64,000 bases of DNA, taken from Ruditapes philippinarum. Its lineage: Eukaryota. The position numbers were made by a program, and so were the translations under genes. The notes under the pieces are model-generated. The model had not been told where the DNA came from and searched no databases. It saw nothing but the letters and a program-made list of their open reading frames with translations. Location: positions 310,001 through 374,000 of the forward strand of contig NW_026852123.1 in assembly GCF_026571515.1 (NCBI RefSeq), read 5' to 3'. Shown piece by piece: positions 1-61,040 of the stretch (position 1 is its first letter; each line of letters opens with the position of its first letter).

Positions 1-32
1 GTTTGAGCAAGATAAAAATAACTAAAGCTTAG
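1..32 (+). CDS. CAV: 3' end of a caveolin core exon (..LSKIKITKA*), truncated by the window start
   Basis: Nearly identical to the end of the 2968-3300 exon (tgtttgagcaagataaaaataactaaagct + stop), followed by the same 3' flank. Confidence 0.8.
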   Translation, partial: LSKIKITKA

Positions 33-1023
33 CCAAGTGAAATAAACTAAGACACAATAGCTGTGTAATGTATTCTAAATATAATCATGTTACAGTGTAA
101 AAATATTTATTATAATATCCGGCAGGCAATGTGTATTTTAAGACTTGTGAATGACTTCTTTGAATGAACAAGAAAATACAAACAAACATTGCAAATGAAT
201 GAAAGAATAAAAATAAATGATCAATTATTAAAGTTTTCGAGTTTCTTTTATTGTGTATGGTCCATGGCCAGCTGTCCATTAGCATACATATAAATGTAGG
301 GAACAGCAAAGTAAAACAAACAGAAGCATATATATATATATAATTCAAGAATACAATAATACAAGGATATAAGACTATAACAAATTCATTGACCACACTA
401 TCAAAACCATTGATTCAGTCAATATTGCAAATTGTAATTATAAGCTGCATGTCTCCAAATGGCCAATCTATTTCGAGAAAACTGAACTTCAGAAAAATGT
501 ACTTAGATTCTAAGGAAAGTAAAAATATTTAAAAATGAAGTAATAATTTCCAAGCAATGTGCTATTATGGACTGTTTTTGCAGTATTTATAGCCATATTT
601 CTACTGCGTTAATAATACAATGACAGCTTGTGTTGCTTTATATACATCATTTTGGTAATGTACGTTGATTGAAAGTGCTGTTTGCAAATTCTTGGTTCAT
701 TTCACAATATTTTACTTTTAAAAACAATTTTAAATTTTTTCAAAAAATAGCATGACACTGAAGACATGCTGCTTTAAATTATCAAATACAAATGCATGTA
801 AAAAGATACATTTTTACAACTTCTTTGAATGTAAACTTGAGACCGCTAGAAGATGTAAATAGCTTCTTTCAAATATTTTCAAATCAAACCTAAGAAATAA
901 TTCAAAATGAATGAGACACAAGCGTGATACCTTTTGCTTTGATGAATTTTCAAATATAATGTCAACTTTTAAAAAATGAGTTCGCGAAAAAGCATGTATC
1001 CTCTTTAATAGAATACGCCACGT

Positions 1024-1347
1024 GAGTTTGAAGATGTGCTTTGTGAACCCGAGGGAATTCGTTCCACTGAATGTTATTGGAAGTTATCCTAAAGATGTTT
1101 CAGTCTCTTGAGAGATTGCGGTTACAAGCTGGCTACACTGCTGTGTGGAATTTGTATGGCTGCATGTCTTGGGTGTCAGTTTGCTTGTGAAGCTCGTAGG
1201 CATATCTGGCTTGTGACTCCAAGAATGAAGAAGCGTGAGATCAAATTCATTGTACTCAGAAAGTTCTACTCTATGTGCATTGACTGTTGTTATGGTCCAA
1301 TCTGTGAGGCTGCTGGTCTCTTTTTGAGCAAAATAAAAATAAAATGA
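1024..1347 (+). pseudogene. Caveolin core-exon pseudogene
   Basis: Reads EFEDVLCEPEGIRSTECYWKLS*RCFSLLRD..., with in-frame TAA at 1090-1092. The splice acceptor is lost through a ~300-nt deletion relative to the 2968 copy, and there are several disruptive substitutions. Confidence 0.85.
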
Positions 1348-2967
1348 AATAAACTAAGACACAATAGCTGTTAAATGTATCTTTAACATTATCATGTTAC
1401 AGTGTACAAATATTTATTCTGAGATCCGTCAGGCAATGTGGTTTTATTCCGAAAAGAAAAACAACTTGTGAAACGACTTCTTTGAATGAACAAGAAAAAA
1501 CAACAAACATTGCAAATGAATGACTGAATGAATGAATTAATTAATAAAATAAATGATCAGATATTAACGTGTTCGAGTATCTTTCATTGTTTGTAGTTCA
1601 TGGCCTATAATCCGTAAGTATACATAAGTAAAGTAGGGAATATAAAAGTAAAACTAACAGAAGCATATAACCAATCCCTTTTTAAACTATATTGACCGAA
1701 TACAAGACTCTAGCAAATTCACTGACTACAAACAAACCATTGATGCGGCCAATATTGCAAATTGTAATACAAATTATTAGATACAAATGCATATAAAATG
1801 TGGAAGTTTTACAGTCATGATACAGATGTCTGAACAATGGCATTTTATTTCGATCTATTCGTGTCTGATCTTTACTCATCATATCCTTCTTCTCCTCCGT
1901 TCTTTTATCACCTTTTGGTTGAGGATGTTGCAACTATTCTACGTACAAGGAAACGTATCATCATCATAAACAGTGCCCTTAAATACCAATGTCTGCCTTC
2001 TCATGACTAATTATAACCACTTTGTGTTGATGATCGTTGGGAATGGACTAGTGTTTCAAACAAATTAATCTGTTCATGGTAAGATGTTCTGATAATTTAT
2101 TGGAATACTCAACGTTTACCCATAACCTGCTGATATTTATGTAATAGATTGGTTCTACATTGAATTTATAACAGTTCATTTAAAGGGATAACAATATTAT
2201 AATATAAAACACTGAGTAAGATACGGTATATATCCTGAACACATGGCCAGACGGCCTGGATGTGCAGACTGACCAGTCTGTACATGGCTAGGCTAAAGTA
2301 ACATCAATACTTTTTCAAAAACAAAGCACTGCTTCGGTTTGAAGTTGTTTTGAAGCACAGTTTTAAATTTACAAGGTATGTTGTTTCTCTTACATGCACA
2401 ACTTGTAGTTTCTTTATAAAAAAATTAATATTTTACAACTTCCAATCTTTGACTTCTTAAAATGTAAGGTAGAGACCGCTAGACGACTGAAATTACTTCT
2501 TTCATTTTTTTTTTCAAATAAAATCTAAGAAATGATTCAACATGAATGAGTTGCAAGCATGACATTCCTTTTCCATGATTTTACTATTTTAAAATCTTTT
2601 CAACTTTAAAAAAAAATGATTTCGCGAAGCCTGCTTTCTCTTTTTCCAATACATGTAAATAGAATACGACAAATAAAGAATTATTTAAAGTCTTCTTCTG
2701 AATCAGCGATAGAAAAAACTTGACATGTAGATTTACTCTTTTTTTCATAGTCAACGATGCAACTGCACATATTAATTTTGGTAGCACGTTTTAAAGCAAT
2801 CTGGTTTAAGTGGTTTTATGGAACAGTATAATAATGCAAATGGCCCCTTAATAGAAAAATTCATAAGTACTTTTATTTTGGTTAACAAACTAATGGCTTA
2901 AATGTAATGCAATATTAAAAGTTTCCTTCATACCATTACTTGAGTGTATAATCTGAATATTTATTAG

Positions 2968-3300
2968 GCAGAGTTTGAAGATGTTCTTGGTGAACCCGAG
3001 GGAGTTCGTTCTATGGAATGCGTCTGGAAGTTGTCCTATAGATGTTTCAGCCTCTGGAGGGATTGCTGTTACAAGCTGGCTACACTGTTGTGTGGAATTT
3101 GTATGGCTGCATGGCTCGGGTGCCAGTTTGCTGGTGTGGCTCTTGATCATATCTGGTGTGTTACTCCAGGATTGAAGATGTGTGAGATCAATTGTATTGT
3201 ATTCAGGAAGTGCTACAATATGTGTATCGACTGTTGCGCTGGTCCAATCTGTGAGGCTGCAGGTCTCTGTTTGAGCAAGATAAAAATAACTAAAGCTTAA
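2968..3300 (+). CDS. CAV: Caveolin core exon (intact, Cys-rich); no own first exon found
   Basis: ttattag|GCA GAG TTT GAA GAT gives AEFEDVLGEPEGVRSMECVWKLSYRCF...LSKIKITKA*; open frame of 110 aa plus stop. Confidence 0.8.
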   Translation, partial: AEFEDVLGEPEGVRSMECVWKLSYRCFSLWRDCCYKLATLLCGICMAAWLGCQFAGVALDHIWCVTPGLKMCEINCIVFRKCYNMCIDCCAGPICEAAGLCLSKIKITKA

Positions 3301-4888: not shown

Positions 4889-5224
4889 ATTGACTTCCAT
4901 GATTCATTTGGTGAACCAGACGGAATACATAGCATTGACTGTGTGTGGACACACAGTTACAAATGCTACACATGTGGAAAGAACTGCTGTTACAAAACAG
5001 TCACTCTCCTCTTCGGCATCTTTATCGCTCTAGCTTGGGGATGTGAGTTTGCCATGACCGCATTTTGGCATATCTGGCTGTGTACCCCGCAGTTGAGATG
5101 GTATTCTATATGGTGTGGAATGTTTCAGAAATGTTTTGGTACAACAGTAAACTGTTTCCTTTCGCCAGTCTGCGAAGCGTGCGGCCTGTTTCTCAATAGC
5201 ATGAGATTGAGACAAGATCGATGA
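4889..5224 (+). CDS. CAV: Divergent caveolin core exon (IDFHDSFGEPDG signature); no own first exon found
   Basis: tttcctttag|ATT GAC TTC CAT gives IDFHDSFGEPDGIHSIDCVWTHSYKCY...WGCEFAMTAFWHIWLCTP...CEACGLFLNSMRLRQDR*. Confidence 0.8.
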   Translation: MDFHDSFGEPDGIHSIDCVWTHSYKCYTCGKNCCYKTVTLLFGIFIALAWGCEFAMTAFWHIWLCTPQLRWYSIWCGMFQKCFGTTVNCFLSPVCEACGLFLNSMRLRQDR

Positions 5225-7218: not shown

Positions 7219-7872
7219 ATGGGAGATGTTGACCTTATAAACAGAGATCCAAATGCTATCAATCCGCATTTAAAGGTAACATTTTATTTTTTTATATAAA
7301 ATATTCATCATTTCATTCATTTTTCAAAAAAAAGAATCATTTATTTACCTTTATTATATATTTTTTTCAAGTTTTTTAATTATTTTTAAAATGTTCATCG
7401 TTACCCGGATTCTTTTCATACAAACACTTAACACAATTTTAAAATGCATTTCTTTAATTGAAAGTGTGAAAAAAAAGAAAAGAAATTTTGTTCTTTATAT
7501 TCTTGAATTGATTAAGTGTTATTGTTTATTCAGTGTGCCTTCGAAGATGTTTTGGCTGAACCAGATGATATCCACAGCATGGATTTTTGCTGGAATCTAT
7601 CCTATTCCTGCTTCAACTTCTGGAAGAACTGCTGCTATAAGCTCAGCACTTTCTTGTGTGGTTGCTGCATAGCTATCGAATTAGGATGTGAATTTGCCGG
7701 CCTTGCCTTCACACACATTTGGTGTATCACACCTTGCCTTAGAATTGTTGCTATCAACTGCACCCCGTACCAGAAATTGTGGGGAGTTTGCTGTAACTGC
7801 TGCGTATCTCCAGTTTGTGAAGCTTGTGGAATGTACTGGTCTCAAATCAAAATTAACATGCAAAAGTCTTAA
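7219..7872 (+). CDS. CAV: Caveolin, Cys-rich minimal type, 131 aa; exons 7219-7275, 7534-7872
   Basis: MGDVDLINRDPNAINPHLK|gt..ag|CAFEDVLAEPDDIHSMDFCW...SQIKINMQKS*; phase-0 GT-AG intron. Confidence 0.93.
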
Positions 7873-10667: not shown

Positions 10668-11296
10668 ATGGGAGACGTTGACCTTATAAACAGAGATCCA
10701 AATGGTATCAATCCACATTTAAAGGTAACATTTTAATTTTTTATATGAAATAAACATCATTAAAATTTCAAAAAAGAATCATAAAAAATCATAAAATTTA
10801 CCTTTATTATTTTTTTTTTCAACTTTTATAATTATTTTTAAAATGTTCACCGTTACCCAGATTCTTTTCATGCAAACATTTAACACACACTTGAAATGAA
10901 TATCTTTAATTGGAAGTGCAAAAAAAAATTGTTAATATTTATATATTGTTTATTCAGTGTGCCTTCGAAGATGTTTTGGCTGAACCAGATGATATCCACA
11001 GCATGGATATGTGCTGGAAACTCTCCTATTCCTGCTTCAACTTCTGGAAGAACTGCTGCTATCGACTAAGCACTTTCTTGTGTGGTTGCTGCATAGCTAT
11101 GGAATTAGGATGTGAATTTGCCGGCCTTGCCTTCCAACACATTTGGTGCATAACGCCTTGCCTTAGAATTGTTGCCATCAACTGCACCCCGTACCAGAAA
11201 TTGTGGGGAGTTTGCTGTAACTGCTGCATATCTCCAGTTTGTGAAGCTTGTGGAATGTACTGGTCTCAAATCAAAATTAACATGCAAAAGTCTTAA
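10668..11296 (+). CDS. CAV: Caveolin, Cys-rich minimal type, 131 aa; exons 10668-10724, 10958-11296
   Basis: MGDVDLINRDPNGINPHLK|CAFEDVLAEPDDIHSMDMCW...; near-identical paralog of 7219-7872. Confidence 0.93.
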
Positions 11297-13830: not shown

Positions 13831-15391
13831 TAATTTATGAAATAACACACACTTTCGGGTTTTTTTTTATGTACAACAGGGAAAAATGCAGGTCATGTTA
13901 TAATTTTTTAACACAATACTGTTGAAAATATAATCATAAAAATATCACGATTGCAATGTGCATATATTTGACAGAAATGCGTTTATTTTCTTACTTTTAA
14001 AAAGCATTCTGAACAAATTTTTAAATCTTTTGAAACGAATATAAATGATTCACTTAAGAAAAAATATCGTTCTCAGTGGTGTTTATCGGCTATTTAACAG
14101 TTTTGATGCGTAGGAATCGACCAATAAGGCCGAGGGCCTGAATGGTTGATTTGCTTGCATCAAAACGATAAATACCGATGTTACATAGCCGATAAATACC
14201 CCTCATACCGATATTATTTCGATTCTTACAGAACAAAATAAGGGAAATCACTAACGTTGTTTTTTTTTTCAAGCAGAGATAACTTCTGCTGCCGATTTTC
14301 GTAAAACGCTACTCTAGTCTCACCCAACAGTCTCTAATGTATAAACATATTGAACAAAATAAATAATAAGAAAAGACAAAGTTAATTAAACGTGCGTCTC
14401 TTAAAGACAAACATTGGAATTTACATTTATAAATGTGTTATCTTTTCTTCCGATTGTAATTATTTCCACTCACACACCCCAAACCGACCACCGCCCTTTT
14501 TTATCCCCTTTATCTTAAAAGTATGCGTACGCAAAGATACATAGATCACCGTTCCATGGTTCATAAAGAAATTTATATATTTCCAGTAAAGGATCCATAG
14601 TGGGCTGGCCCAGCTCTGAATCTTGAACAATTCATCCAATGTTTAAAAGATGTCGATGTACAAAATATGAATATTAAGCAACCAACAGTTTACCGCCTGG
14701 TCTGTCTACATGGAATTGCAGGGATCATTCAATTTCCAGATTTTTGTCTGCTCTATACTGTTGACCTTTGGTTTTATTTTCCGAAGAATTAAATATATCT
14801 CCAACGTGCAGTATGATAAGAATAAAGCACGATGATTCAATCACTTCTCATATCACACTAAAATGCATTATATTAATTTTGTTGTGTTAATGAATTACCA
14901 CTTAAGCGTACAGAAACTTTAAAAAATGATTATAGTTTGTCAATGATAGGGTGTAAAGAATTATAGAGTGTATTTTATTATACAGTTTTTGTCTTTCAGG
15001 ACCATTCAAGCCTTTTGTTGTTTTTTTAAAGAAACAACTTTTTCTTTAACATGATATATAATTTTTGCATAATAAAAAATGTGACTAAGGATTACCTCTG
15101 TATAACACTTTGGTAATAAGATGATTTCAATGATCAGTTCAGTGTTTAGTCGACTGTCGCCGCATAGTTTTCAATATGACAGATGTTGATTTTGTCAACA
15201 AGGATAGTAACAATATCAATACACTTAAAGTTAAGCTGAGTGGAAAAAAGCTGAGTGGAAATGTTGTATATATCGTTAAAGATCAACAACACGCCTTAGC
15301 TTTTTATCTAACTTGCGATATATGGCCAAAACATCCGGCCAGAATTCAACAATAAATTTTAATTTGATGTTATCATTAGGACCGACGACAA

Positions 15392-18054: not shown

Positions 18055-18726
18055 TTAACCCTTGGTTATCTTTATTTTGCTGAAGAGTGCTCCACAAGAT
18101 TCACACACAGGTACCACGCAACAACTGAGACAGGATCCGAAGAATTTCTGCGCACATCCCATGCATATAGAGAAGGCTCTCAAGAAAGGGGTACAACACC
18201 ACACGTTTTGAAATGTGATACCGGCAAAACAGCAACCCCATTCCAGAGCAATGCACAATCCACAAAGGAAGGTCAAGATCTTGTAACAAAGGTTCTTGCC
18301 ACATTCGAAACAGGAATAGCTGTTCTTCCAAACGCAGTCCATAGACCGTATACCCTCAGGCTCGCCAAGGACATCTTCAAACTGAACCTGTAAATATCCG
18401 GAAAGATTTAAAAATTAAAGTTTTGAACAATAACGTAGAAATACTCATTGTTATAACAGTCATTGTAATAAAGTTAAAACATTATCATATAATTATATTT
18501 TAGAAATGTATTTTTGCTTTAATAAATCCAAGGAAGTGTCATGAAAAAGTTTGAAATGAAGAAAATTATTTTCTTTTAACAGAATGTCATGGTTTTATTA
18601 TAATTTTGTTTTTAATTTTTATTATTAAACACCATCATTTAATTTTGAAATATGTATATTTTTTCATTTTACCTTAATATGGCCATTAAGTTCATTTGGA
18701 TCACGATTATCTAAATCAACACCCAT
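18055..18726 (-). CDS. CAV: Caveolin, Cys-rich minimal type, 128 aa; exons 18726-18673, 18387-18055
   Basis: MGVDLDNRDPNELNGHIK|VQFEDVLGEPEGIRSMDCVW...FSKIKITKG*. Confidence 0.93.
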
Positions 18727-21740: not shown

Positions 21741-22474
21741 TTAACTTTTTGCAATCCTTATTTTGCTGAAGAGTGCTCCACAAGATTCACAGACAGGTAC
21801 TACACAACAACTGAGACAGGATCCGAAGAATCTTTGAAAACATCCCATACATATAGAGAAACATCTGAGGCATGGGGTATAAAACCATACGTTTTGAAAT
21901 GTGATACCGGCAAAACAGCAACCCCATTCCAGAGCCATACACAACCCACAAAGGAAGGTCAAGATCTTGTAACAAAGGTTCTTGCCACATTCGAAACAGG
22001 AATAGCTGTTCTCCCAAACGCATTCCATGGAACGTACACCGTCGGGCTCCCCAAGGACATCTTCAAACTGAACCTATAAATAGCCGGAAAGATTCAAACA
22101 ATAAAGTTTTGAACGGTAACGTAGAAATACTCATTGTTTTAACAATAATTTTGTTATAAAAATGTAAGGAAGTGTCAAAATAATCAATCATATTTTCCAA
22201 TTTTTTTCTTTAATTATAATACTCACTCAGGTTCGAAGCGTTTTATGTTATAACAAAAAAGTAAAAATATCATAAAAATAATTCTCCATCATTTTTATCT
22301 ATTTATATATATTTTTTTAATGAATCGTTTTATAAAAACATCAGTATCAACAATCTGATTTTGTTTTCAAAAGATATAGAAAGAATGTTTTCATTACTTA
22401 TCTAAAGTTGTTTAGCTTACCCTGATATGGTTATTAAGATCATTCGGGTCACGGTTTTCTAAATCAACACCCAT
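21741..22474 (-). CDS. CAV: Caveolin, Cys-rich minimal type, 128 aa; exons 22474-22421, 22073-21741
   Basis: MGVDLENRDPNDLNNHIR|VQFEDVLGEPDGVRSMECVW...FSKIRIAKS*; closest to the 18055 gene. Confidence 0.93.
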
Positions 22475-23786
22475 CTTGTGTTCAGATAATACCATTCACC
22501 AATGTCCAACATGAAAATGAACAGCAACTGATTTTGAATTTTTTTTGTTCTCGCCTTTATATCTTTATCTTCTTCAGAAACAAAAGCAAGGTGCGTGTCC
22601 AACTATTTACGTTATTTAACAAGATTATGCTTTCAAAACAGAAATCATAATACAATAGTGAAGTTATTATAATTATACATAATTGTCTTAAAGTTTTTAC
22701 TCGATTTAGTTTCACATATTTACTATCTATATTCTATTTGAGTCGTTCTAAACAGAACTAATTATTTCGTAACGTATCCTATTAGACGACCACATTGGCA
22801 ACAATTTATTGTTAACAGGTAATTTTACTTTAGATACGTAATATAAATTGTTCTACTTTAATGTTTGAAAACAACATAAACATGTACATTACTATTATTT
22901 ATAGTGCTCAATATCTTGAATCTTCATCTTTTTAAGTCAAACATAAACTATAACCAGATCAACCATATATTTATTGTTGATATTAAATTGATAAAATCCT
23001 TTCGAGATTCATGATTATCTGCTTCAGGCCGTTGATTCAGAAGTCATGTGGGATTAGTAGTCGGTCTCTTGCGGAGAAATTGGTAATTCGAGGAGACAGT
23101 TCGTTGGGTCGACAGCCGAGATGTGACAAAATGAAGTGTTACAATCAGCTTAAAACAGAAAACCAAACAGACAAATCAGTTTTATATCAAAGAATAATAA
23201 TAAAATAAAACAAAAACTACCGTTTTGGGTGTACTATTTAATCTATTTCTGAATAGGTCATGAAAATTTCGGGAAAAATTACTTTATCATTCGATGGTAA
23301 AATGATAGTAATTATACATGTATGTAACTGGTGCAATTATTATATCACTGTAGTCTTAATACAACTGTTTCTCCACTGTTTTTTCTGCTTAATTAGTCAT
23401 ATGTGTATATATATTTATAATTTTACAATTTAATTGTTAGATCTATATTATGTGATTTACCTGTTCTCCTATATTATAAATATTAATGTAAAAAATGTTA
23501 AAAGATAAAGGCAATTTCGCTTATGCCTTTCAATTCAGACATAACTGTATGCCATTGAGATCACGGCGTTCCTAAGCAATTAAGGTATCACATTAAACTT
23601 TTTTAATATTTCTATTTTTGAAGGAACCTTGATTTTTATTTACAGTCAATGGCAATAAGGTTATTAAATGCTCGTTCACAATACCAGTATATAAGGAAAT
23701 AATCATGAAAAAATCAAATCCACTTTTGGAAGTGACTGGGCTGGACGTGGTAAACACTAGTATATCACATAAATATATCATAAAAA

Positions 23787-29583: not shown

Positions 29584-30142
29584 ATGGCTGATTTATCTAA
29601 CCGTGATCCTAATAAACTTAATAGCCATATAGAGGTACGAATATGTTACCTTTTCATGTTCTATAATCAAGAAAAAGTTTTTTTCTTTTCTTTCGTTCTT
29701 TGTAATTTATAGTCTAAGAATATTTAAAGTCTTAAAATAAAAAAAACTGGTAAAACAGATATGATATATAAAACACAACATTTGTCTAGATTATTCTTTT
29801 ATTTTCAAGGTTATGTTCGAGGATGTCTTTGGAGAACCCGATGGCGTTCGATCAATGGACTGTATTTGGAAAAACAGTTACTCCTGTTTCGAATGTGGCA
29901 AGAACCTTTGTTACAAGATTATGACCACTCTTTGCGGGTTGTGCATTGCTCTGGAGTGGGGTTGCGAATTTGCCATGCTCACATTTCATCATGTGTGGTG
30001 CTGGACACCATGCTTGAGAGATTTCTCCATCACGATGGGATGTGCCAAGAAGTTCTTCCAGACATGCCTGAGCTGCTGCGTCGCCCCATGCTGTGAAGCA
30101 ATTGGTGCATTCTTCAGTAAAGTTAAGATCGAGAAATCATAA
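29584..30142 (+). CDS. CAV: Caveolin, Cys-rich minimal type, 127 aa; exons 29584-29634, 29810-30142
   Basis: MADLSNRDPNKLNSHIE|VMFEDVFGEPDGVRSMDCIW...FSKVKIEKS*. Confidence 0.93.
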
Positions 30143-37326: not shown

Positions 37327-37974
37327 TTAACTCTTTTGAATTTTGATCCGAGTAAATATACCTCCACAAGCCTCACAGAATGGACTACAACAGCAGTTGA
37401 TAATTGTACCGAAGATTCTCTGTGCACAGCCCATGCAGATAGAGAAATCCCGTATCCAAGGAGTGTAGCACCACACATGGGCAAATGCCGTTTGCGCAAA
37501 TTCGCAACCCCACATCAACGCAATGCATACACCGCACAGTGTTGTCAGGATTCTGTAACAGAGGTTCTTTCCGCATTCGAAACAGCAAAAACTTGCTTTC
37601 CAGATGCAATCTAAAGAGTGGGCTCCATCTGACTCAGCTAAGACATCTTCGAACATAACCTAGAAGCACAAAAATAACTGGGCATGAATTCAATCCTTTT
37701 TTTTTTCAATTAAATGTAATTGTTTTATTTAAGGAGTGAAATAGAATTCATATTTCCTTCTCCAAATTTTAAGAAATATCCTAAAATGATATTAAAGATT
37801 GTCTGTTACGGAATCAGGAGCAAAAGTAGTGTAACTTATTTCAAAAAGAAAATTGTTCTATATTATTTAAGTTCAAGAATCTAAAAGGAAAATTAGAAAA
37901 GAAAATACCTGAATGTGACTATTAAGACCATTTGGATCTCTGTTTTCCAGATCAACTTCTCTTTGCTGAGACAT
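37327..37974 (-). CDS. CAV: Caveolin, Cys-rich minimal type, 132 aa; exons 37974-37909, 37659-37327
   Basis: MSQQREVDLENRDPNGLNSHIQ|VMFEDVLAESDGAHSLDCIWKASF...FTRIKIQKS*. Confidence 0.93.
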
Positions 37975-40709: not shown

Positions 40710-41753
40710 ATGGCTGACATTGATTTAGAAAATCGAGATCCGAACAACATAAATGACCATTTAAAGGTATATTTATTACATTGATAGTATGCAAATCATT
40801 CTCTTTTAATACACAATCTTTAAAGGATTTGTTGATGTTGTTTTTTTTTCTAATCAATATCAAAGAAGCCAACGTTTCAGACAGAAGCAAATCTGCATTT
40901 TCCGACTGATCGGCTGTTCTTTGTTTGGCATTTTATACATGCATTCTATGTAATTAGAACAAAGAACACGTAAATGCAACGAGGTCTATTTCGCAAAATA
41001 AGAATGAAAAGAGTTAAAAATGTAGAAATTATTTCTTTAAATTTATTTTCGATACCACTATAAAGTCTTGTAAGACCTATTAATGTAAATGGAACAGTTT
41101 TTTGGGGGGATGTCGTCTGCACATGATAAACAGATTTAAGAGATGACGAACTACGATCCCTTATAAATTGTATTTACTGTTCAATCCATTCACTGTCATT
41201 TTTTTTTCTTAGTGACGGCAATAATCTTTACCTTTTTGAGGACCGAAATGTCTAGCATGCTCGTAAATACAAATTGTTTGAAGAATTTAATACAACTAGT
41301 TCAAAATATTTTACTTTGAAGTGAAATTTTGTGCATACTAAACTCGTCTACACATACATTTAATGTTCTTACCAAGAAGTATTTTCATTTACATATACAT
41401 AAATGAATTCCCTATTTTAGGTACAATTTGAAGACGTTTTGGCAGAACCAGAAGGTATACGATCCATCCCATGCATATGGACTTTGAGTTACAAATGTTT
41501 TGAATTTGGAAAATCGATCTGCTACAAAATTCTAACAACATTTTGTGGACTCTGCATTGCGCTCGGCCTTGGCTGTGATTTCGCAATGGTGGCGTTCGAT
41601 CATGTCTGGATATGGACCCCGTGTATGAGAGACTTTACCATCTGCGTGGGTTGTTACCAGAAGATTTTTACCACTCTTGTCAACTGTTGTTGTACGCCGA
41701 TCTGCGAAGCATGTGGTGGTTTCTTCAGCAAAATACGTATCCAAAAGAGTTAA
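40710..41753 (+). CDS. CAV: Caveolin, Cys-rich minimal type, 129 aa; exons 40710-40766, 41421-41753
   Basis: MADIDLENRDPNNINDHLK|VQFEDVLAEPEGIRSIPCIW...FSKIRIQKS*. Confidence 0.93.
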
Positions 41754-45878: not shown

Positions 45879-48129
45879 TCAATCGTTCGAATTATGCACT
45901 TTTATGCTGCTAAACAATTTTCCAGCAGCAGCAAAACAAGGCTCAATAAAGGAATGAACTAACACTCCGTACACTTTCTGTAATGGTTTCACTTGAATGG
46001 AGAAACTCCGGATGCTTGGCTGGTAATACCAAATCATGCAAAATGAAAGGCACGCAAAATGGAGACCCCAGCACAAAGCGCAAGGAACACCACAAAGCGC
46101 TGACAGAAATTTGTAACACCAAAGCTTTGTGTCGGTGAAAATCCGATAGGTCGCGCCCCAGATGGTTCCAAAACTGTACGTTCCCTCCGGTTCCGCAAAA
46201 ATCTCTTCAAAATCAATCTAAAAAAATGTATTAACGTAAATAACATAAAATTCAAAGCAGATTTCAACATGACTTTTTTGTTTGCAATTCTAAAATAGGC
46301 AAGTGAGTTATTACAATGGGGCTTAATGGCGACACAAAAAAATCAAACGTAATACAACTGACTGGAATATGTCAAACTATATTTAGTAGTAATATATTTA
46401 ATTTGAACAGTATAAACAAGACAACATATGCAGCAAAGACAAATTGGTCTGGACACGTGATGAAAGCCATAAATACGGACCTATGCGTCTGCTTCTTTTT
46501 TTTTTCTTTGAAATGTTGTAATCAAGAATTTTACCCTTTGTTCACATGGTATTATGAATAAGAATCTGACATTTTTAGGAAAAACTAGAATATTTTTTAA
46601 AAGAAAATATTTTTTTTATTATTATTATTATTTATTCATTTACACGTTCTTATATGAATAAATGTTTCATTTCAACATATTTGGATTTAAAGTTTTCTAC
46701 ATGTATTATAATTATGTATCTTTAAACACGGTGTATTTTTAAAGCCCAAGCTGGGTAACACCGTTTATCAGCAAAGTAATATGTCTAAAGGTGGGTCTAA
46801 AGAGATTGGGGCCAACCCCCCATACCTTGCATTTTTATTTCATATATTAAATTGTCATTAAACTATAATATTTTGCTAATGTTCACAATAAAAGTCAAGA
46901 TAAAATGTATAAATCTATACATCTGCTATCTGCAGTCCACTGTCATTGGTTAAATTAAAATAATTATAATAATAATTCCAAAATATTTGTGTGAAAAAAA
47001 GTTTAAATATTTCTATGTATCATGCTTATGGTGCGTTTAAGAAAACATTGTTAAGCGATCAAAATCCTATTTTGAAATGTCAGCATAAAATTTTGTTCCG
47101 GAATATTTTAATCTGTCTAATATTTATGTTTGATACAATGCATAATTGATTTTAATGAATTGATCCAAATTTTAATCCTGATTTGAAACTGATCGTTTAA
47201 TTATCTTTACACTTACTATTGTACTTTCTAGATAATAATATGACATGATTTTATGCCAATTAGCAGATTTTATTTTCATTCATTATTATAATGCAAGAAA
47301 AGGAAATGTTTTCATCCCAATTTATCGATATAACATGCTTAAACCCATAGAAACAAAACTAGGATCAGTTGATCCTTATCCTATTTATTTTCCTTTTTAC
47401 ACCGGACATGAGGTATATGCACCTAGATAGTAAATATTCAGAAATGCTAGGAAACCTACATTATTCACTTATTATTACGTATTATTGATATTTTTGCTCC
47501 ATTTTTTAACGTTAGCGTTAAATGATTATTAGATTGTTTCATCAAGTTATTAACACATTGTTTTAGAATAATGAACATATGAGTGAAAATTATCTTACCT
47601 TTACTATGCCATTTACATCCTCGGGATCTCTGTTTTCTGGTATTTTACTTTTCTTTCCCTTCATGTTTATTGGTTTAGTTTTTGTTTTCGTTTTAGTTGC
47701 TTGTTTAGTCTTTGCGTTTGGTTTCGGAGACACGCTATGAGTGCTGGCACGAGTAGATTGCAGGTTCGGCGACATCGATGGTGATGAATTATGTGTCAAA
47801 ACCGGTTGTTCTTCAATTGATGACTTTTTGAAAGCTAGCATAGCTCTTGGTGATGCCGGTGCGGTGCTTGGTGATCCCGTATCAATTACTGGCGACTTTA
47901 TTTGCGCGACTTCTACCGTTGCGGGTCCGTCACTTATGTCACTGTGGTATGATTGTCCAGAACGCCGTCGCGTGTTATTTAGACGGATTACGTTTAAATC
48001 CTCAAAAGAAGACGTAGACGCCGATGATGCTCCGCTGGAACGCCGAGATTTATCATTTACGCGTTCATTTAGAGGAATATCCACTGATGGAGGCTCCATC
48101 ATATTCGCTTCCTTCTCATCGTCTGACAT
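45879..48129 (-). CDS. CAV: Canonical-type caveolin with long Ser/Pro/Lys-rich N-terminal extension, 289 aa; exons 48129-47599, 46217-45879
   Basis: 177-codon exon ending ..IPENRDPEDVNGIVK|gtaag, joined to tag|IDFEEIFAEPEGTYSFGTIWGATYRIFTDTKLWCYKFLSALCGVPCALCWGLHFA...FSSIKVHNSND*; an additional upstream exon cannot be excluded. Confidence 0.9.
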
Positions 48130-49505: not shown

Positions 49506-49641
49506 NNNNNNNNNNNNNNNNNNNNNNNNNNNNNNNNNNNNNNNNNNNNNNNNNNNNNNNNNNNNNNNNNNNNNNNNNNNNNNNNNNNNNNNNNNNNNNN
49601 NNNNNNNNNNNNNNNNNNNNNNNNNNNNNNNNNNNNNNNNN
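49506..49641. other. Assembly gap (136 N)
   Basis: Run of N. Confidence 1.
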
Positions 49642-51542: not shown

Positions 51543-52415
51543 TTAAGATTTCTTGAAAGCGCTGAAGAATAAGCTGCACGTCTGGCAGCACGGTTCACAT
51601 GCACACGTGACACACTGAGCCCAGACTTTCTTCAGGAAACCGCAGTTTAGATCCATGTATTTGATGCATGGTGTGAAACACCAAATATGGAGAAGAGACG
51701 CTTGTGCGAACTCACAACCAAGCTCCGCAGCGATACAGATTCCGCAAAGAAGTGTTGCGACTTTGTAGCATATGCCCTTCCATAGATTGAAGCACGTGTA
51801 AGACAACTTCCACACGCAGTCAATGCTGTGTGTTCCCTCCGGTTCGGCTAAAACATCTTCAAACTTGCACTGAAATGATAATAGAATATTAATACCAACA
51901 TACAGTAAATTGAATGACATTCATTTCATATTTCAAACGGAACACTGAAAGGTAATCAATTTTGATAAATATTTGCGGCAAAAAGTGCACGAGTTATAAA
52001 TGCGCTGAAGAAAGGTGAAATCGTCACAGATTATATAATTAGCCTTAATATCTATTAAGCGGTGCTACATTTATCTGATAAAAATAGGAATTTATAAATA
52101 TTGTCTTACTCAATGTTAAAAATGATTTGCTTTGCTGAAATCAGTTGATTTCTTATATTCCTCAAGTCATTTTGCATCCAATCAAAGTGTCGGAAATCAG
52201 ATCTACTATGTAAGTTAATAAATCACTGTTTATGACATTAAGTTAGGGTGCGAAAATAATAATATAAAGATAAAATAAATAAATAATAAATAATAATATA
52301 AAGATGTTCAAAATATTTAGTAAATAAAAGATAACAAAAAAATTATTGTACTTACTGAAAGATGGTCGTTGATATTATTAGGATCTCTGTTTTCAAGGTC
52401 AACACTATCAGACAT
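51543..52415 (-). CDS. CAV: Caveolin, Cys-rich short-C-terminus type, 128 aa; exons 52415-52356, 51869-51543
   Basis: MSDSVDLENRDPNNINDHLS|CKFEDVLAEPEGTHSIDCVW...FFSAFKKS*. Confidence 0.93.
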
Positions 52416-53998: not shown

Positions 53999-56100
53999 TC
54001 ACGATTTCTTAAACGCATGAAAGATCTGTCCACATGAAATACAGCACGGGTCAACACAGCACGATAGAATGATGGAATAACATTTCCTGTAATAGTGGCA
54101 GTTGATCTCTAGAGCTTTAAGAAATGGTGTAAACTGCCAGACATGGTTGAATGCAATGGATGCGAATTCACTCCCAGCTGCGCGGCAATACAGCACCCGC
54201 AGAACAGTGTTAGCATCTTGTAACAACATCCCTTCCAGCACTCAAAGCACGAGTAAGATAATCTCCAAACACAGTCTATACTCTGTACGCCTTCCGGTTC
54301 CGCCAGAACATCCTCAAATGCGCACTAAAAATAGAACAGTGTATAGTTTCAAGTTTTTATTTTTGAGAACAACATAGTTTTTACAAAATAACACTAGTGC
54401 AAACGATCAAAGATTATCATAGTTTTTCAGAAGATTATAAATTTAACAATTTATGTTGACAAGAATTTTTATGTATTTTATTTTTTATGGTATAGATCAG
54501 TCCTGCTTCGGCGCCATATGACCTTAATTGTGTGGTGCGCCGTAAAACCAAACAAAACAAATATATACATGATGTACTAGCACCCAGTTTCAATTAAAAA
54601 GGTTATAATTTCAGAGTTCATTAACGGCGACATTGACACATTACTGGTCACACCGCGCCGAACACTGTAAAACGTAGGCCTAAAAATCTTAATTTCAAGT
54701 TTTTCGGAAGTTTACAGTATTATTTTACAAAACTAGTAAATTCGTACTAGCCGATTTTTTAACGAAAGAAATGAATGCTACTTTTTCTCATTTTGGTATT
54801 CTATATGTATACGAAAATCTGAATAAACTGTGGTTCATCACAACAAAATAACCTGAAAATTGCAGGCCCTGTTTAATTGAGTCTGTGCATGAGGGATAAT
54901 GAATAAGTGCAACATCACTCACGCCTCATGCACCTGAATACACCACTTCGAAACCCCTTTCATTATACTAACATCTTAGTTGGATCCAAACAATGCAAGG
55001 ACCGAAACCAAACGCCGGTCCCTATATTGTTGAAAGCCATCCGTGATGTGTACTTTTTTGGTTAAAGTCGCCCAATATATATGGTCTTGAATAAGCTGAT
55101 ATATTATATACAAAACTTGCAGACAATAGTTTATCATAATTTTTACACAAATAAATAAGTTTATTACTATAGAAAAAGAAAAATGAACTGACCCCATAAT
55201 AAAAAATGGTAAAAGCTTATTAAAATTGGCCAATTCTTGTCAAAATCAAAAGAATCCCAAAATATGCAGATTGCATCCGGTATTTCTATTTCTATGCTTG
55301 CTCGTTTCCAAATATATTTTTACAAAATGGCCAGATGAAACTAAAAACTGAAAGTACATGATACCGAAAATTTAACGCCGATTTTGACTATAACATTTTA
55401 TTTATCTATTGTTAAATAAAGAGTTGTTAGTCTAATTCAACTGCTCCAAATGATTGTTTACTTTCTTTCTTTTGATTTTTGATATCAGATTGTGTATGTC
55501 CACTTTGCATCCATTTTACTTTTTCATAAATACTTTTTTAAAGATGTCTCGAGGATTCTCTGTTTATACTCATTTCTAAGATATATAATATTTGTTTATA
55601 ACCTGTAGTGTAGCAACTCAAAAGAATTTATTTATGTAGATATTTTAGGAAGAAAAAAAGAGATATCTTTTTTAAACATTTTTTTAAGATACTGACATTT
55701 TTATTGATGATTTTATTTCAAAACAATTTTGAGCTTAGTGCAAAACCATATTTTGTAAAACATTTTGTAAAAATGATATTCGAACAATCCTTTAAATTGT
55801 CGATCAATATTAAAATTATTTTTTTCGAAATTTTGAGATACGATAAGTTACAAAAATAGGATAGCCTTGTTATATGCGTTTGTACGTTAATTGGTAAATG
55901 AAGCGTTAAAAGTTTTACCATGTAATTGTCAAAAGGATCGACATTTATTTGTTTAGCTATAAGTTTTCTAAAATCGTGTACTTTGTTAAATCAGAATAAT
56001 TGAGCAAATATTTGACAAGTTAAGTAATGTTTAACCAACAACAAACCTGTATATGACTGTTTATACAATTTGGATCTCTGTTAATTAGGTCTACCGACAT
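53999..56100 (-). pseudogene. Caveolin with a 1-nt frameshift; exons 56100-56047, 54324-53999
   Basis: MSVDLINRDPNCINSHIQ|CAFEDVLAEPEGVQSIDCVW...CIAAQLG[-1 nt at ~54171]EFASIAFNHVW...IFHAFKKS*. The exon is 326 nt versus 327 in its neighbour; could be an assembly error. Confidence 0.75.
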
Positions 56101-57318: not shown

Positions 57319-58959
57319 ATGGCTGATTCTCTCGATCTCATTAACCGTGATCCAAACAACATCAACAATCATTTGCAAGTAAGTATTTTACAAGGTTTTT
57401 TTTTTAATAAAATAACATTTCATAAGAATTTATCAAATTGAAAACAAAATGTATATTTTTGCTTTTAATGTTTAAGAAAAAATACATTATCTATAAGAAC
57501 GTTTTTCTTATATTTTTTGCGGATAACATATTTGGCTACTTTATAAAAACTACATAATAAGAAAATGATTTTATTTCTTAATTTTAGTTTTATTACAAAT
57601 GTGGAAATCCTTAAGTTATTAAGCACAAATTTATGCTGAAACATCTGTAAAGAAAACATTTTTTGCAACAATATTTCAAGTCTAGATTTTATACGATATG
57701 AAATACATATTGATAAAAGCATGATTTACTAACATTTGTATATGTTGCCTAACATTAAAAGTAGCTTAGAACCTTTTTACGACTCATACTATTATTTTAT
57801 TTATTATTATCATTATTATTAATTTATTTACTATTATTTTAAAATCTATAAAGAAAATTTATTTTGATTATAACATGTTAAAATGTACTCTTTCTAGCAA
57901 GAACCTATATATCTCTAATGCTATATAATTTAATACTTTATCATAAAGAAAAAAGAAATATAGACTAGTATTTATTTTGAGTATTGACTAACAATAATGC
58001 TGCCTAACATAGCTTTTTTTCGTCATTTTCTTCACGAATTTAATTTTGATCATTCTCATTGAAAGAATCATAGAAATATTTGAATTACAATCATAAAATC
58101 TTAACAATTTTCGATCTTTAAAAAACACAGCAAATACAAATGGATTTAAGTGAACACAAAAATGGATATTCGACGGATTTTAAACCATTCGTAGGATTTT
58201 AATTTTCACTTCGAAAATGGATTTATAACTGTGTTTTAATTCTTTGTATGGTTTTCGGTCTCACTTTTAGTTTATCATTTCACAGTTATAATAATTTAAT
58301 TTCGAAAGGACATTAGATTTAACAACATTATAGCAAACCAAGTTAAGCTCCTGGAAAGTATTCCTTCTCTAGAAAATTTTCAAAGGTAAGATACCATTTG
58401 ATCTTTATCCGTGGTCTGAACAAGCATGTGGTAAATATCTATTAATTGGATGAATTTTAAAAGTGTTAAGCTTTCAAAACTTCTAACATCGTAAAGGATT
58501 TGTTTTACGACTATCATCCTAACACAAATTCTCATAGGAAAAGCCTAGATGTAGATAGATAGTTTGGCCAATAGAATAGTTGTTAAAATGAAGTGTTCTT
58601 TTTAAATCATCATATTTGTAATACGCATTTTGCAGTGCAATTTTGAAGATGTATTTGCCGAGCCCGAAGGTACCCACAGTATTGACTGCGTTTGGAAACT
58701 CTCCTACACTTGCTTTAACTTATGGAAAGGCATCTGTTATAAGATTGCTACAATCCTCTGTGGAATATGCATTGCGGCTGAATGGGGTTGTGACTTTGCT
58801 CTAGTTTCTTTCTACCACATCTGGTGCTTCACACCCATCTTCAAGATGTTGGATATCAACTGCGGATGTGCCAAGAAGTTCTACATCCAGTGTGTTAGCT
58901 GTTGCATCGAGCCTTGCTGTATGGCATGCGGTCAGCTCTTCCACAATTTTAAGAAATAA
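57319..58959 (+). CDS. CAV: Caveolin, Cys-rich short-C-terminus type, 127 aa; exons 57319-57378, 58636-58959
   Basis: MADSLDLINRDPNNINNHLQ|gtaagt..tttgcag|CNFEDVFAEPEGTHSIDCVW...LFHNFKK*. Confidence 0.93.
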
Positions 58960-59324
58960 CTTTATACAAATTGTGACAGACTTTGTTAACATTGCCGAAA
59001 TTTTCGTTCTAACTTCCTATTCATGTACTATATTTCGTACACATTTCGTCATAGGGATATGAAATTCGTCGATATATATTGGACTTAAGATACATGCAAT
59101 AACACCAACAATGCATGCATGATGGATTTATTTTTTTAAAGATGGACTAAAACACCGTGGATAAGGCACAACCTTTTGTTTGAAATGAAGACTTTAAATG
59201 TCTGAATCATCAAAGGGTAAATTTCTGTGATATGAGAAAATGAATTAATATAGTTTATTTATTAAATCAAATTTGTTTAATTGTTTGTTTTGCTTCATAA
59301 TTCTGCTTCCAGATATATTGCATT

Positions 59325-59480
59325 TTTGTACCGCTTATAGGTATTTGCTTCATTATTTCGCTTATAGGTGCATGGATTCATTATTTCGCTTATTAGAAAA
59401 TGGATTAAGCACTCGCATTTATGAAAATGATTATTTTATCATGCTTGTAAGTACACTGCTTCAGTATTTCGCTTATAGGT
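59325..59480. repeat. Short degenerate tandem repeat (ttcattatttcgcttataggt)
   Basis: About four degenerate copies. Confidence 0.6.
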
Positions 59481-60716
59481 AAAGAAAATATTTCATAATA
59501 CTGAAATCACGATGAACCATCATCCAGTCTTGTTGGAAAAGCAGAAGGTCATCTTTTTGCAATAACTTTTCCCTTTTTGGCTGTTCATATATTCATTTGC
59601 GTTTAATATAGCCAATTACACTTATTCTTTGAAAAGGCTCTTTGATGCTATTGTCTGACTTGTGTAATAGGCAAAGGATATATTACATTTAAATGCTATA
59701 AAATCATTGATAAATTAAGAATTCATGTGTTATAAAATCATTGGTGAATTAAGAATACAATACAAATTGTAATCAGTCATATTATTCGCCGTTTTTTTAT
59801 GCATTCTGTATAATGTAATAATTTATTACACTATTTCTAAAACAACGGTGTACTAGTAATAAAAAATATTATCCCTAAAAATAACAGTAGATAAAAAATT
59901 TAAATAGCGCTTTACGAAGTTACTTATAAAGCCATTTTTGCATTGGTCTGAAATATCTTAATTCTCAAAATGAAGAAATCTCTTCAGTTCAAATACATAT
60001 TGATGTATCGAAGAATATTCATATGCAGAGACAACTTGTAAATAAGTAACTTCTTGGTTGAATACATTAAATCATATGAAGTAACTGAATTAATTTATAG
60101 TTTATCATTTTCACTCAAATGAACAAATTATACATTAAGCCGAGGATTGTTAGGAAATTATATAGATACACTATTTAGCAAGCAGCCAGTACAAAATGTT
60201 ATCATTCAACATGTCATGCAATTTAAAAAATACTGAAATTGACAAGGAGAAAAAAGGAGAAGACAATGTGTGAGTATGAAAATTTTATTTGTTCATAGTA
60301 TTAACACAATTGTAAGTGATACCAGCACAGCTACTCAAATACTTACAAAAACTTATAGCTTGAGTTTGAATGCTTTTATTTCGCTTTTTATATATCATCG
60401 CATATAGCTGTTTATGTAATATTTCTTTTATTGCTTGAATGTCCATGTGATTTTTGCTTTTTTATGTTGCGTTTCGCTTTTAGCCATACTGCTTTCATAC
60501 TTTGATATATAGCTTTTTACGTATAAACTGTTATGGTTTTGCTTTCCAAATATTTCTAACAGTGGATACAGAATACTGTTTGAATAAACGGTGATAACAA
60601 GTTAAGTTGCTTAAATCATTCGCTTCTGCAGAAAATTGCTATATACATGTATATATTTAATTGAGTCTGTAAAATGATGTTGATGCGTTATCAATTGTTC
60701 ACTTTTTTATCTACAG

Positions 60717-61040
60717 TGCTGCTTTGAAGATGTCCTGGCTGAACCTGAAGGTACCCACAGTATTGACTGTGTGTGGAAACTCTCCTACAGTTGCTTCAAC
60801 ATGTGGAAAAGCTGCTGTTATAAGCTGTCAACAATACTCTGTGGCATATGCATTGCGGCTGAATGGGGATGTGACTTTGCGGCTGCTTCCTTCTACCACA
60901 TCTGGTGCTTCACACCAATGTTTAAGATGTTGGACATCAACTGTGGATGCATGAAAAAGATGTACACTCAATGTGTCGCCTGTTGCATCGAGCCTTGCTG
61001 TATTGCATGTGGTCAACTCTTCCATCACTTTAAGAAATAA
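60717..61040 (+). CDS. CAV: Intact caveolin core exon lacking its own NRDP first exon; candidate alternative last exon of the 57319 gene
   Basis: ttttttatctacag|CCFEDVLAEPEGTHSIDCVWKLSYSCF...LFHHFKK*; 324 nt, same length and phase as 58636-58959. Confidence 0.85.
   Translation, partial: CCFEDVLAEPEGTHSIDCVWKLSYSCFNMWKSCCYKLSTILCGICIAAEWGCDFAAASFYHIWCFTPMFKMLDINCGCMKKMYTQCVACCIEPCCIACGQLFHHFKK

What the first reader, a model, noticed from the sequence alone, without database searches (positions are those of the whole stretch)
1..61040. Mega-array of caveolin genes: 18 core-exon copies in ~61 kb
Seen: 18 caveolin core exons on both strands, 13 matching first exons and no other supportable gene, with the array running off the left edge. 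Known: mammals have three caveolins (CAV1-3) and C. elegans has two. Inference: a lineage-specific expansion with several subfamilies (left KITKA group, DDIHS pair, CFECGKN group, long canonical copy, right FKK group). It looks like a diversified membrane-sculpting/scaffolding repertoire evolving by birth and death, like immune or stress gene arrays.
Basis: partly seen in the sequence, partly recalled or inferred. Interest (0 to 1): 0.85.

Follow-up and report, generated by a model that had tools for sequence, protein, structure and literature searches.

The report
Large tandem caveolin array in clam
This stretch of the Manila clam genome is a real cluster of small caveolin (membrane-shaping protein) genes, part of a 31-copy, ~154 kb array that other clams and mussels share and that public gene predictions already cover, so it is a large but explainable family expansion and not a new kind of system.

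Summary
The window (Ruditapes philippinarum, contig C610:310001-374000) holds 17 complete caveolin core exons plus the tail of an 18th at the left edge. It also holds 13 usable first exons and one decayed orphan. Every core exon I submitted to Pfam Caveolin scored above its cut-off (36-110 bits), and the cores align without gaps to human CAV1 residues 67-173. Fifteen cores are intact. One has an in-frame stop and no splice acceptor, and one has a 1-nt deletion.

The window shows only part of the array. The whole array has 31 cores and 27 good first exons over about 154 kb. It ends just left of the window and runs 13 cores further to the right.

The copies are not assembly artefacts: the best duplicated block in the window is 88.7% identical. 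Recent pairs have dN/dS of 0.04-0.24.

RefSeq models match 12 cores exactly. Two isoforms share one first exon but use different core exons, so there are fewer genes than cores.

The array is therefore old, not specific to this lineage.

Expression could not be tested, and function is inferred. The scan had already noted the array's right half (s1-792534).

The parts
1..32 (+). Copy 0: last 29 coding bases plus the stop codon of a core exon that starts at C610:309700. It is used by RefSeq isoform X1.
1021..1353 (+). Copy 1: dead core exon with an in-frame stop after 'WKLS' and no AG acceptor.
2968..3300 (+). Copy 2: intact core exon (KITKA group). RefSeq isoform X2 (XP_060595761.1) splices it to a first exon 9.1 kb upstream, outside the window.
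4889..5224 (+). Copy 3: open but divergent core (FHDSFGEP in place of FEDVxxEP, long tree branch). No first exon of its own was found.
7219..7275 (+). First exon of copy 4 (19 codons).
7534..7872 (+). Copy 4 core exon (DDIHS pair). Matches XP_060595745.1.
10668..10724 (+). First exon of copy 5.
10958..11296 (+). Copy 5 core exon (DDIHS pair). Matches XP_060595733.1.
15176..15229 (+). Orphan, degenerate first exon (KDS in place of RDP, GTT donor) with no core exon nearby.
18055..18387 (-). Copy 6 core exon (CFECGKN group). Matches XP_060595771.1.
18673..18726 (-). First exon of copy 6.
21741..22073 (-). Copy 7 core exon. Matches XP_060595721.1.
22421..22495 (-). First exon of copy 7. It lies head-to-head with copy 8.
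23787..23849 (+). First exon of copy 8 (21 codons, ending ...SHVQ).
24101..24433 (+). Copy 8 core exon. Matches XP_060595780.1. This is the copy used for the PDB comparison and the structure model.
29584..29634 (+). First exon of copy 9.
29810..30142 (+). Copy 9 core exon. Matches XP_060595520.1.
32025..32096 (+). First exon of copy 10.
32486..32818 (+). Copy 10 core exon. Matches XP_060595528.1. Its Mercenaria orthologue is placed with 100/100 support.
37327..37659 (-). Copy 11 core exon. Matches XP_060595541.1.
37909..37974 (-). First exon of copy 11.
40710..40766 (+). First exon of copy 12.
41421..41753 (+). Copy 12 core exon, intact. It groups with a Dreissena protein at 99/89 support.
45879..46217 (-). 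Copy 13 core exon: the canonical-type caveolin. It has 7 Cys, keeps the CAV1 Pro110 equivalent, and is the best match to human CAV1 (E 7e-35).
47599..48129 (-). Long Ser-rich first exon of copy 13 (177 codons, ending ...NRDPEDVNGIVK). It has no Pfam domain.
49506..49641 (.). Assembly gap (N), intergenic between copies 13 and 14. It touches no caveolin exon.
51543..51869 (-). Copy 14 core exon (FKK group). Matches XP_060595791.1.
52356..52415 (-). First exon of copy 14.
53999..54324 (-). Copy 15 core exon with a 1-nt deletion near 54170, in the Cys codon of 'LGCEFA'. It is otherwise conserved. Either a young pseudogene or an assembly indel.
56047..56100 (-). First exon of copy 15 (GTT donor). 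The peptide is identical to that of the intact Mercenaria orthologue. It lies head-to-head with copy 16.
57319..57378 (+). First exon of copy 16. It is also the only candidate first exon for copy 17.
58636..58959 (+). Copy 16 core exon. Matches XP_060595815.1, which is labelled 'isoform X1'.
60717..61040 (+). Copy 17 core exon, intact, with no first exon of its own. dN/dS against copy 16 is 0.11. Probably an alternative terminal exon.

Best explanation
The window is the left 40% of one tandem array of caveolin genes in the Manila clam Ruditapes philippinarum. The whole array spans C610:303859-457520, about 154 kb, with 31 core exons and 27 good first exons.

The typical unit has two exons. A first exon of 17-25 codons encodes M...(D/E)LxNRDPNxxNxH. 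A phase-0 intron of 175-1700 nt follows. A core exon of about 108-112 codons then begins two codons before the FEDVxxEP signature. The product is a 125-135 aa caveolin. It corresponds to roughly residues 50-173 of human CAV1, the ordered part of the CAV1 disc complex. It lacks the disordered N-terminus and is unusually rich in cysteine (11-17% of the core).

One member, copy 13, is a canonical-type caveolin with a long N-terminal exon.

The array grew by repeated tandem duplication and inversion. Most of that growth predates the split of venerid, mactrid, myid and dreissenid bivalves. Duplication, decay and purifying selection continue today.

At least at the left end, and probably at copies 16 and 17, several core exons share one first exon as alternative terminal exons.

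Inferred, not shown: the proteins form caveolin-type oligomeric discs in the cytoplasmic membrane leaflet, probably heavily S-acylated, without cavins. The paralogues would then differ by cell type or by membrane property.
For: Family membership:
- Pfam PF01146 scores 36-110 bits for the nine cores submitted, and the whole-genome scan with the same model recovers all cores.
- The cores align without gaps to PDB 7SC0 CAV1 residues 67-173 (E 2.7e-24 for copy 8, 7e-35 for copy 13).

Gene structure:
- Acceptor and donor positions and phase are conserved.
- Exon models for cores 0, 2, 4-11, 14 and 16 are identical to deposited RefSeq proteins of R. philippinarum.

Organism: the RefSeq protein XP_060595771.1 is encoded exactly by copy 6 and sits on a contig of the same length, 802382 bp.

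Extent of the array.

Not an artefact: the longest self-match in the window is 1.4 kb at 88.7% identity, and dS is at least 0.12.

Selection: dN/dS is 0.04-0.24 for 13 recent pairs.

Age:
- The careful ML tree places window subfamilies with Mercenaria, Mya, Dreissena and Mactra proteins at 96-100% bootstrap. Gastropod sequences fall in both main lineages and a chiton in one.
- The DDIHS pair has a Mercenaria counterpart in the same protein cluster.
- Runs of consecutive accessions or locus tags on one chromosome in Mercenaria, Mya, Mactra, Dreissena, Sinanodonta and Potamilus suggest arrays there as well.

Shared first exon: isoforms X1 and X2 have the same first exon but use core 0 or core 2.

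No cavin: PF15237 has no match in the genome.
Against: - No expression or splicing data could be obtained.
- Cores 3, 12, 13 and 17 were not found among the deposited proteins I opened.
- The isoform that would join the 57319 first exon to core 17 was not seen.
- The structure model is a featureless long helix and gave no specific fold match.
- Disc formation, S-acylation and any functional specialisation are inference from homology.
- Synteny in other bivalves is inferred only from accession order and shared chromosome, not from coordinates.
Confidence: 0.88

Rival explanations
1. The many copies are haplotype or assembly duplications of a few genes.
For: One small contig (C159, 23 kb) is 97.6-99.3% identical over 5.6 kb to C610:427.7-434.5 kb. 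It carries a core identical to copy 26. RefSeq gives two accessions for that one protein.
Against: Inside the window, the best duplicated block is 88.7% identical over 1.4 kb. Core pairs have dS of 0.12 up to saturation. Copies lie in tandem on one contig and on both strands. Most have distinct orthologues in other species.
Confidence: 0.03
2. The array is mostly a graveyard of non-functional duplicates around one or two working genes.
For: Copy 1 is dead and copy 15 is frameshifted. There is an orphan decayed first exon at 15176. Copy 3 is divergent with a degraded signature motif. Expression was not tested.
Against: 15 of 17 complete cores are open with AG acceptors. dN/dS is 0.04-0.24, and 0.11 for copies 16/17. 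If one of a pair had been free of constraint, a value near 0.5 would be expected. Subfamilies have been retained since the divergence of several bivalve families.
Confidence: 0.06
3. The region is essentially one complex locus in which a few promoters and first exons are spliced to many mutually exclusive core exons, giving a combinatorial repertoire.
For: RefSeq isoforms X1 and X2 share one first exon and differ in core exon. Cores 3 and 17 lack first exons. Copy 16's protein is labelled isoform X1. The orthologous Mercenaria and Dreissena genes also carry isoform labels X1-X3.
Against: 13 of the 17 complete cores in the window have their own first exon 175-1700 nt upstream. Orientation switches seven times in the window. 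Most RefSeq models pair each core with its adjacent first exon. Sharing is therefore local: about two units in the window.
Confidence: 0.1
4. The expansion arose within the Ruditapes lineage.
For: Several sister pairs are species-specific in the tree: copies 4/5, 6/7, 16/17, 0/2, and 20/21. The cores at 102-146 kb are near-identical to one another.
Against: Every short subfamily has orthologues in other bivalve families with strong support. Dreissena, Mya, Mercenaria, Mactra and unionids each have many such genes on one chromosome.
Confidence: 0.05

Closest known systems
Human/vertebrate caveolin-1, -2, -3 (Pfam PF01146; CAV1 8S disc complex, PDB 7SC0)
   Same: Same family. The cores align without gaps to CAV1 residues 67-173. 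They keep the FEDVxxEP signature, the scaffolding, intramembrane and spoke regions, and the Cys133 and Cys143 positions. The first exon carries the RDPxxLN stretch that precedes the signature in CAV1.
   Different: Only 125-135 aa, with no disordered N-terminus. The core is 11-17% cysteine, against 3 Cys in CAV1. Pro110 is replaced, mostly by Cys, in the short copies. The FKK group ends a few residues earlier. There are 31 core exons instead of 3 genes. No cavin gene was detected in the genome.
Predicted 'caveolin-1-like / caveolin-3-like' genes of other bivalves (Mercenaria mercenaria, Mya arenaria, Dreissena polymorpha, Mactra antiquata, Sinanodonta woodiana, Potamilus streckersoni)
   Same: Same length, the same two-part architecture and the same subfamilies. 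Many copies lie on one chromosome with consecutive accessions or locus tags. Isoform labels suggest shared first exons there too. A few of them appear in Data S1 of Han et al. 2025 (PMC12330381), placed on chromosomes bearing ancestral linkage group Eb.
   Different: Copy numbers and recent duplicates differ by species. I could not obtain coordinates to compare gene order.
Other tandem gene-family expansions of bivalves (for example C1q-domain genes, PMC6835236)
   Same: Many tandem duplicates, birth and death, and family-level conservation with local turnover.
   Different: Those families encode secreted recognition proteins with a documented immune role. Caveolins are cytoplasmic-leaflet membrane proteins, and no immune role was tested here.
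Variable-exon clusters such as clustered protocadherins or UGT1A
   Same: Several similar exons in tandem are joined alternatively to a shared exon. Here the shared exon is one first exon, joined to core 0 or core 2.
   Different: Here the shared exon is at the 5' end and tiny, while the variable exon is the terminal one and encodes nearly the whole protein. Sharing involves only a few cores. Most units are ordinary separate genes on both strands.

Membership tests
Caveolin (Pfam PF01146) | Match to the family HMM above the curated cut-off (25 bits) | tested here: met
   36-110 bits for the nine cores submitted. The genome-wide scan gives 37 matches, 31 of them on C610.
Caveolin (Pfam PF01146) | Signature motif FEDVIAEP at the start of the ordered core | tested here: met
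   FEDV[LFI][AG]EP or a close variant is present in 16 of 17 cores. It is degraded (FHDSFGEP) in copy 3.
Caveolin (Pfam PF01146) | Collinear similarity to the structurally ordered part of CAV1 (scaffolding, intramembrane, spoke and C-terminal strand regions) | tested here: met
   phmmer against PDB chains: 7SC0 residues 67-173 with no gaps, E 2.7e-24 for copy 8 and 7e-35 for copy 13.
Caveolin (Pfam PF01146) | Caveolin protomer fold | tested here: inconclusive
   The AlphaFold2 monomer has pLDDT 85 and two long helices. Foldseek found no match. In VIA-align, caveolin complexes 9dn0 and 9dn1 score Z 5.7-5.9, tied with unrelated coiled coils.
Caveolin (Pfam PF01146) | Assembly into oligomeric membrane discs | not testable with these tools
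   Would need expression and electron microscopy. No complex prediction was run.
Caveolin (Pfam PF01146) | Cysteines at the S-acylated positions of CAV1 (133, 143, 156) | tested here: met
   Positions 133 and 143 are Cys in copy 8, and position 156 is Ile. There are 12-13 further Cys in the core. Acylation itself was not tested.
Vertebrate-type caveola coat (caveolin plus cavin) | Presence of a cavin gene (PF15237) | tested here: not met
   No match in the 1.4 Gb genome. The search is exon-wise and had no positive control, so this is weak evidence. It agrees with the established view that cavins are restricted to vertebrates.
Variable-exon cluster (protocadherin/UGT1A type) | Most tandem exons share common exons within one transcription unit | tested here: not met
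   13 of the 17 complete cores have their own adjacent first exon, and the units lie on both strands. Only the leftmost unit, and probably copies 16/17, share a first exon.

The most novel reading that the evidence does not exclude
Bivalves keep, at the ancestral caveolin locus, a conserved cluster of about 30 minimal, cysteine-rich caveolins. Part of it is wired as alternative terminal exons. Its products would mix into homo- and hetero-oligomeric discs, giving different cell types (ciliated cells, haemocyte classes, symbiont-bearing gill cells) distinct cavin-free membrane platforms. That would be a combinatorial membrane-scaffold code not known in any model organism.
Probability: 0.1. Interest if true: 0.8.

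Novelty: new member of a known kind. Interest (0 to 1): 0.4.

Why it matters
Caveolin biology rests on species with two or three genes. A clam with about 30 constrained paralogues offers a natural series of sequence variants of the disc-forming core. Each paralogue is reduced to the ordered core and loaded with cysteines, and no cavin gene was detected in the genome.

The paralogues could show which parts of caveolin set oligomer size, curvature and lipid anchoring. They could also show what caveolins do where classical caveolae are not expected.

The array lies on the same conserved chromosome group as vertebrate caveolins, so it also bears on how the family expanded. The individual genes are already in public annotation, so the value lies in recognising the array and its conservation, not in discovering new genes.

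Tried and rejected
- **Fold search:** Foldseek gave nothing. VIA-align gave only tied helical matches.
- **A wrong turn, corrected:** the search with copy 8 returned no identical protein, so I first took several copies to be unannotated. Opening the clusters showed that they are looser than their nominal 90% (members at about 74% identity). The R. philippinarum proteins were hidden under Mercenaria, Mactra, Mya, Dreissena or unnamed Logan representatives.
- **First exons for cores 1-3 and 17:** broad motif scans found none.
- **Weak caveolin-like words next to the assembly gap** (for example 'WKLSYK' at 49726-49752): six-frame reading shows these are chance matches.
- **Spliced models:** joined models were not sent to any search tool. 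Exons were searched separately by reference, and deposited proteins were compared with exon translations only inside scripts.
- **Literature:** I found no paper describing a bivalve caveolin array. Han et al. 2025 list only a few caveolins per bivalve.
- **Not run:** Complex prediction and the search of protein representatives. Neither would have changed the verdict.

Full report
**What is in the window**

A tblastn search with seven core-exon translations finds 17 caveolin core exons on both strands, between 1024 and 61037. A low-stringency pass adds a 9-residue C-terminal tail at 3-29(+). After fetching the flank, that tail proved to be the end of a complete core at C610:309700-310029.

Ten ORF translations were scanned against Pfam. 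The nine that are cores match PF01146 (Caveolin) at 36-110 bits, against a cut-off of 25. The long first exon has no domain.

In every copy except copy 1, an AG acceptor lies exactly 6 nt before the F codon of the FEDV motif.

A motif scan finds first exons of 17-25 codons, M...(D/E)LxNRDPNxxNxH.., each ending in a phase-0 GT donor. It also finds one long first exon (47599-48129, minus strand). That makes 13 usable first exons. A 14th at 15176 is degenerate and has no core. Introns are 175-1722 nt long (two donor positions corrected by hand against orthologues).

**The assembly gap**

The N run at 49506-49641 lies between the long first exon of copy 13 (ends at 48129) and the stop codon of copy 14 (51543).

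Six-frame reading of 300 bp on each side shows no caveolin exon. The ORF listed across the gap is only a read-through of N.

The gap therefore does not affect any copy or reading frame. Whether a copy is hidden in it cannot be known.

**Organism and existing annotation**

The closest proteins are bivalve 'caveolin-1-like' predictions. One of them, from Ruditapes philippinarum (XP_060595771.1), is encoded exactly by copy 6. It sits on a contig of 802382 bp, which is the length of the window's contig C610.

Opening the protein clusters showed RefSeq proteins identical to my exon models for cores 0, 2, 4, 5, 6, 7, 8, 9, 10, 11, 14 and 16, and for seven cores further right.

The genes are therefore already predicted in public annotation. 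The exon structure I derived is the same as NCBI's.

**The whole array**

A six-frame Pfam search of the 1.4 Gb genome gives 37 matches, 31 of them on C610 between 309.7 and 456.3 kb. Re-annotation of C610:290-474 kb gives the following:

| Feature | Value |
|---|---|
| Core exons | 31 |
| Good first exons | 27 |
| Orientation string | ++++++--+++-+---+++------+++--- |
| Median core-to-core spacing | 4.2 kb |

The array starts with two first exons at C610:303859 and 305252, just left of the window. It ends at about 457.5 kb. The window therefore shows its left 40%.

Outside the array:
- C159 is a probable haplotig of C610:427.7-434.5 kb, 97.6-99.3% identical.
- C7258 carries one further FKK-type copy.
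- Three dispersed loci are divergent caveolins.

**Real copies under constraint**

The longest self-match inside the window is 1.4 kb at 88.7% identity, between copies 4 and 5.

Nei-Gojobori estimates on 105 gaplessly aligned codons give dS of 0.12-0.95 and dN/dS of 0.04-0.24 for the recent pairs. Most other pairs are saturated at silent sites.

Broken or decaying elements:
- Copy 1 has an in-frame stop and no acceptor.
- Copy 15 has a single-base deletion near 54170, in the Cys codon of 'LGCEFA'. It is otherwise conserved, and its first-exon peptide is identical to that of the intact Mercenaria orthologue. It is either a very young pseudogene or an assembly indel.
- Copy 3 is open but has a degraded signature motif and a long branch in the tree.

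**Fewer genes than cores**

RefSeq isoforms X1 and X2 (XP_060595756.1 and XP_060595761.1) share the first exon at C610:303859. They differ in using core 0 or core 2, skipping dead copy 1.

Cores 3 and 17 have no first exon of their own. Core 17 is nevertheless constrained: dN/dS against core 16 is 0.11 at dS 0.95. The core-16 protein is labelled 'isoform X1'.

Core 17 is therefore most simply a second terminal exon of the gene that starts at 57319. I did not see that isoform itself.

**Age of the array**

A profile search returns 259 proteins of about 125-135 aa. They come from many bivalves, gastropods, a chiton and a brachiopod.

A careful ML tree (95 rows, 131 columns, rooted on copy 13) gives these placements:

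| Window copies | Grouped with | Support (bootstrap/SH-aLRT) |
|---|---|---|
| 10 | a Mercenaria protein | 100/100 |
| 8/9 | a Mercenaria protein | 98/94 |
| 12 | a Dreissena protein | 99/89 |
| KITKA group | Mercenaria and Mya proteins | 100/97 |
| 14/16/17 | Dreissena, Mya, Mercenaria and unionid proteins | 98/93 |

The right-hand groups of the array fall with Mactra and Dreissena proteins (99-100). Both main short-caveolin lineages include gastropods, and one includes a chiton. The tree has few columns and many unresolved forks, so only the starred groupings are used here.

The DDIHS pair shares a protein cluster with a Mercenaria protein that has the same C-terminus.

Consecutive accessions or locus tags on single chromosomes suggest comparable arrays elsewhere:
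- Mercenaria: XP_045164731 to 164742
- Mya: WAR26849 to 26866
- Mactra: KAL4226695 to 226704
- Dreissena: KAH3892454 to 892477
- Sinanodonta: locus tags 016417 to 016445
- Potamilus: locus tags 038405 to 038422

Han et al. 2025 place representative members (Mercenaria XP_045164732.2, Dreissena XP_052250592.1, Mya Chr14) on chromosomes carrying ancestral linkage group Eb, which they infer to be the ancestral caveolin chromosome (PMC12330381). They list only a few caveolins per bivalve and do not describe the arrays.

No paper in the searchable library does.

**What the proteins are like**

The cores align without gaps to CAV1 residues 67-173 of PDB 7SC0. The first exon supplies the RDPxxLN stretch that precedes the signature motif in CAV1.

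The products therefore equal the ordered part of CAV1 without its disordered N-terminus. The FKK group ends a few residues earlier.

The 28 intact short cores contain 10.8-16.8% cysteine, against 6% in canonical copy 13. Cysteines stand at the CAV1 133 and 143 positions and at many positions that are hydrophobic in CAV1. The Pro110 position is mostly Cys in the short copies, and Pro only in copy 13.

An AlphaFold2 monomer (pLDDT 85) is two long helices and gave no specific fold match. No cavin domain (PF15237) is detectable in the genome.

**Likely function (inference)**

By homology, the proteins should form oligomeric discs embedded in the cytoplasmic leaflet, probably with multiple S-acyl anchors and without cavins.

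The literature on other molluscs reports caveolin transcripts with three cell-specific patterns:
- as markers of ciliary bands (cited in PMC9524096);
- as a highly specific marker of one oyster haemocyte cluster (PMC12064177);
- as enriched in symbiont-bearing gill cells of a deep-sea mussel (PMC7750550).

This fits division of labour among paralogues by cell type. It was not tested for this array.

**Verdict**

It is an old, conserved bivalve feature made of already-predicted genes, with some shared-exon wiring. It is not a lineage-specific novelty.

I rate interest as moderate. The size and conservation of the repertoire, the minimal cysteine-rich architecture and the alternative terminal exons have not, as far as I could find, been described. 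They would be useful to caveolin structural biology, but nothing here lies outside a known family or a known mode of genome evolution.

Noticed in passing
window 12053-12629: A minisatellite (42-bp unit, about 11 copies, with higher-order 177-bp periodicity). It produces the spurious ORFs listed on both strands at 12028-12769.
   Followed up: partly
window 11297-18054, especially 15176-15229: A 6.8 kb stretch without a core exon between copies 5 and 6. It holds a decayed first exon (KDS in place of RDP, GTT donor), probably the remnant of a lost unit.
   Followed up: partly
L002 (C610:303859 and C610:305252, 6.1 and 4.7 kb left of the window): Two first exons in tandem lie upstream of cores 0-3. 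The first is used by RefSeq isoforms X1 and X2. No deposited protein was found among those I opened for the second (MGPDLTNRDPNE...).
   Followed up: partly
L014 (contig C159) versus C610:427.7-434.5 kb: 97.6-99.3% identity over 5.6 kb including intergenic DNA, with an identical core exon. RefSeq gives two accessions for the one protein (XP_060579628.1 and XP_060595628.1). Probably a retained haplotig that inflates the genome-wide count.
   Followed up: yes
L015 (C2906), L016 (C11784), L017 (C13541): Three dispersed, divergent caveolin-like loci outside the array. The one on C13541 has in-frame stops. They may represent other caveolin types.
   Followed up: no
window 22495/23787 and 56100/57319: Two head-to-head gene pairs (copies 7/8 and 15/16) have start codons only 1.2-1.3 kb apart. 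These are candidate shared bidirectional promoter regions.
   Followed up: no
all short core exons, e.g. window 24101-24433: The cores are 10.8-16.8% cysteine. Cys replaces Pro110 and several hydrophobic residues of CAV1, while the canonical copy 13 keeps Pro and has only 7 Cys. The same traits occur in gastropod and chiton homologues.
   Followed up: partly
protein database clusters: Clusters described as 90% identity contain members about 74-87% identical from different species. A missing identical hit in the search for homologous proteins therefore does not show that a protein is absent.
   Followed up: yes
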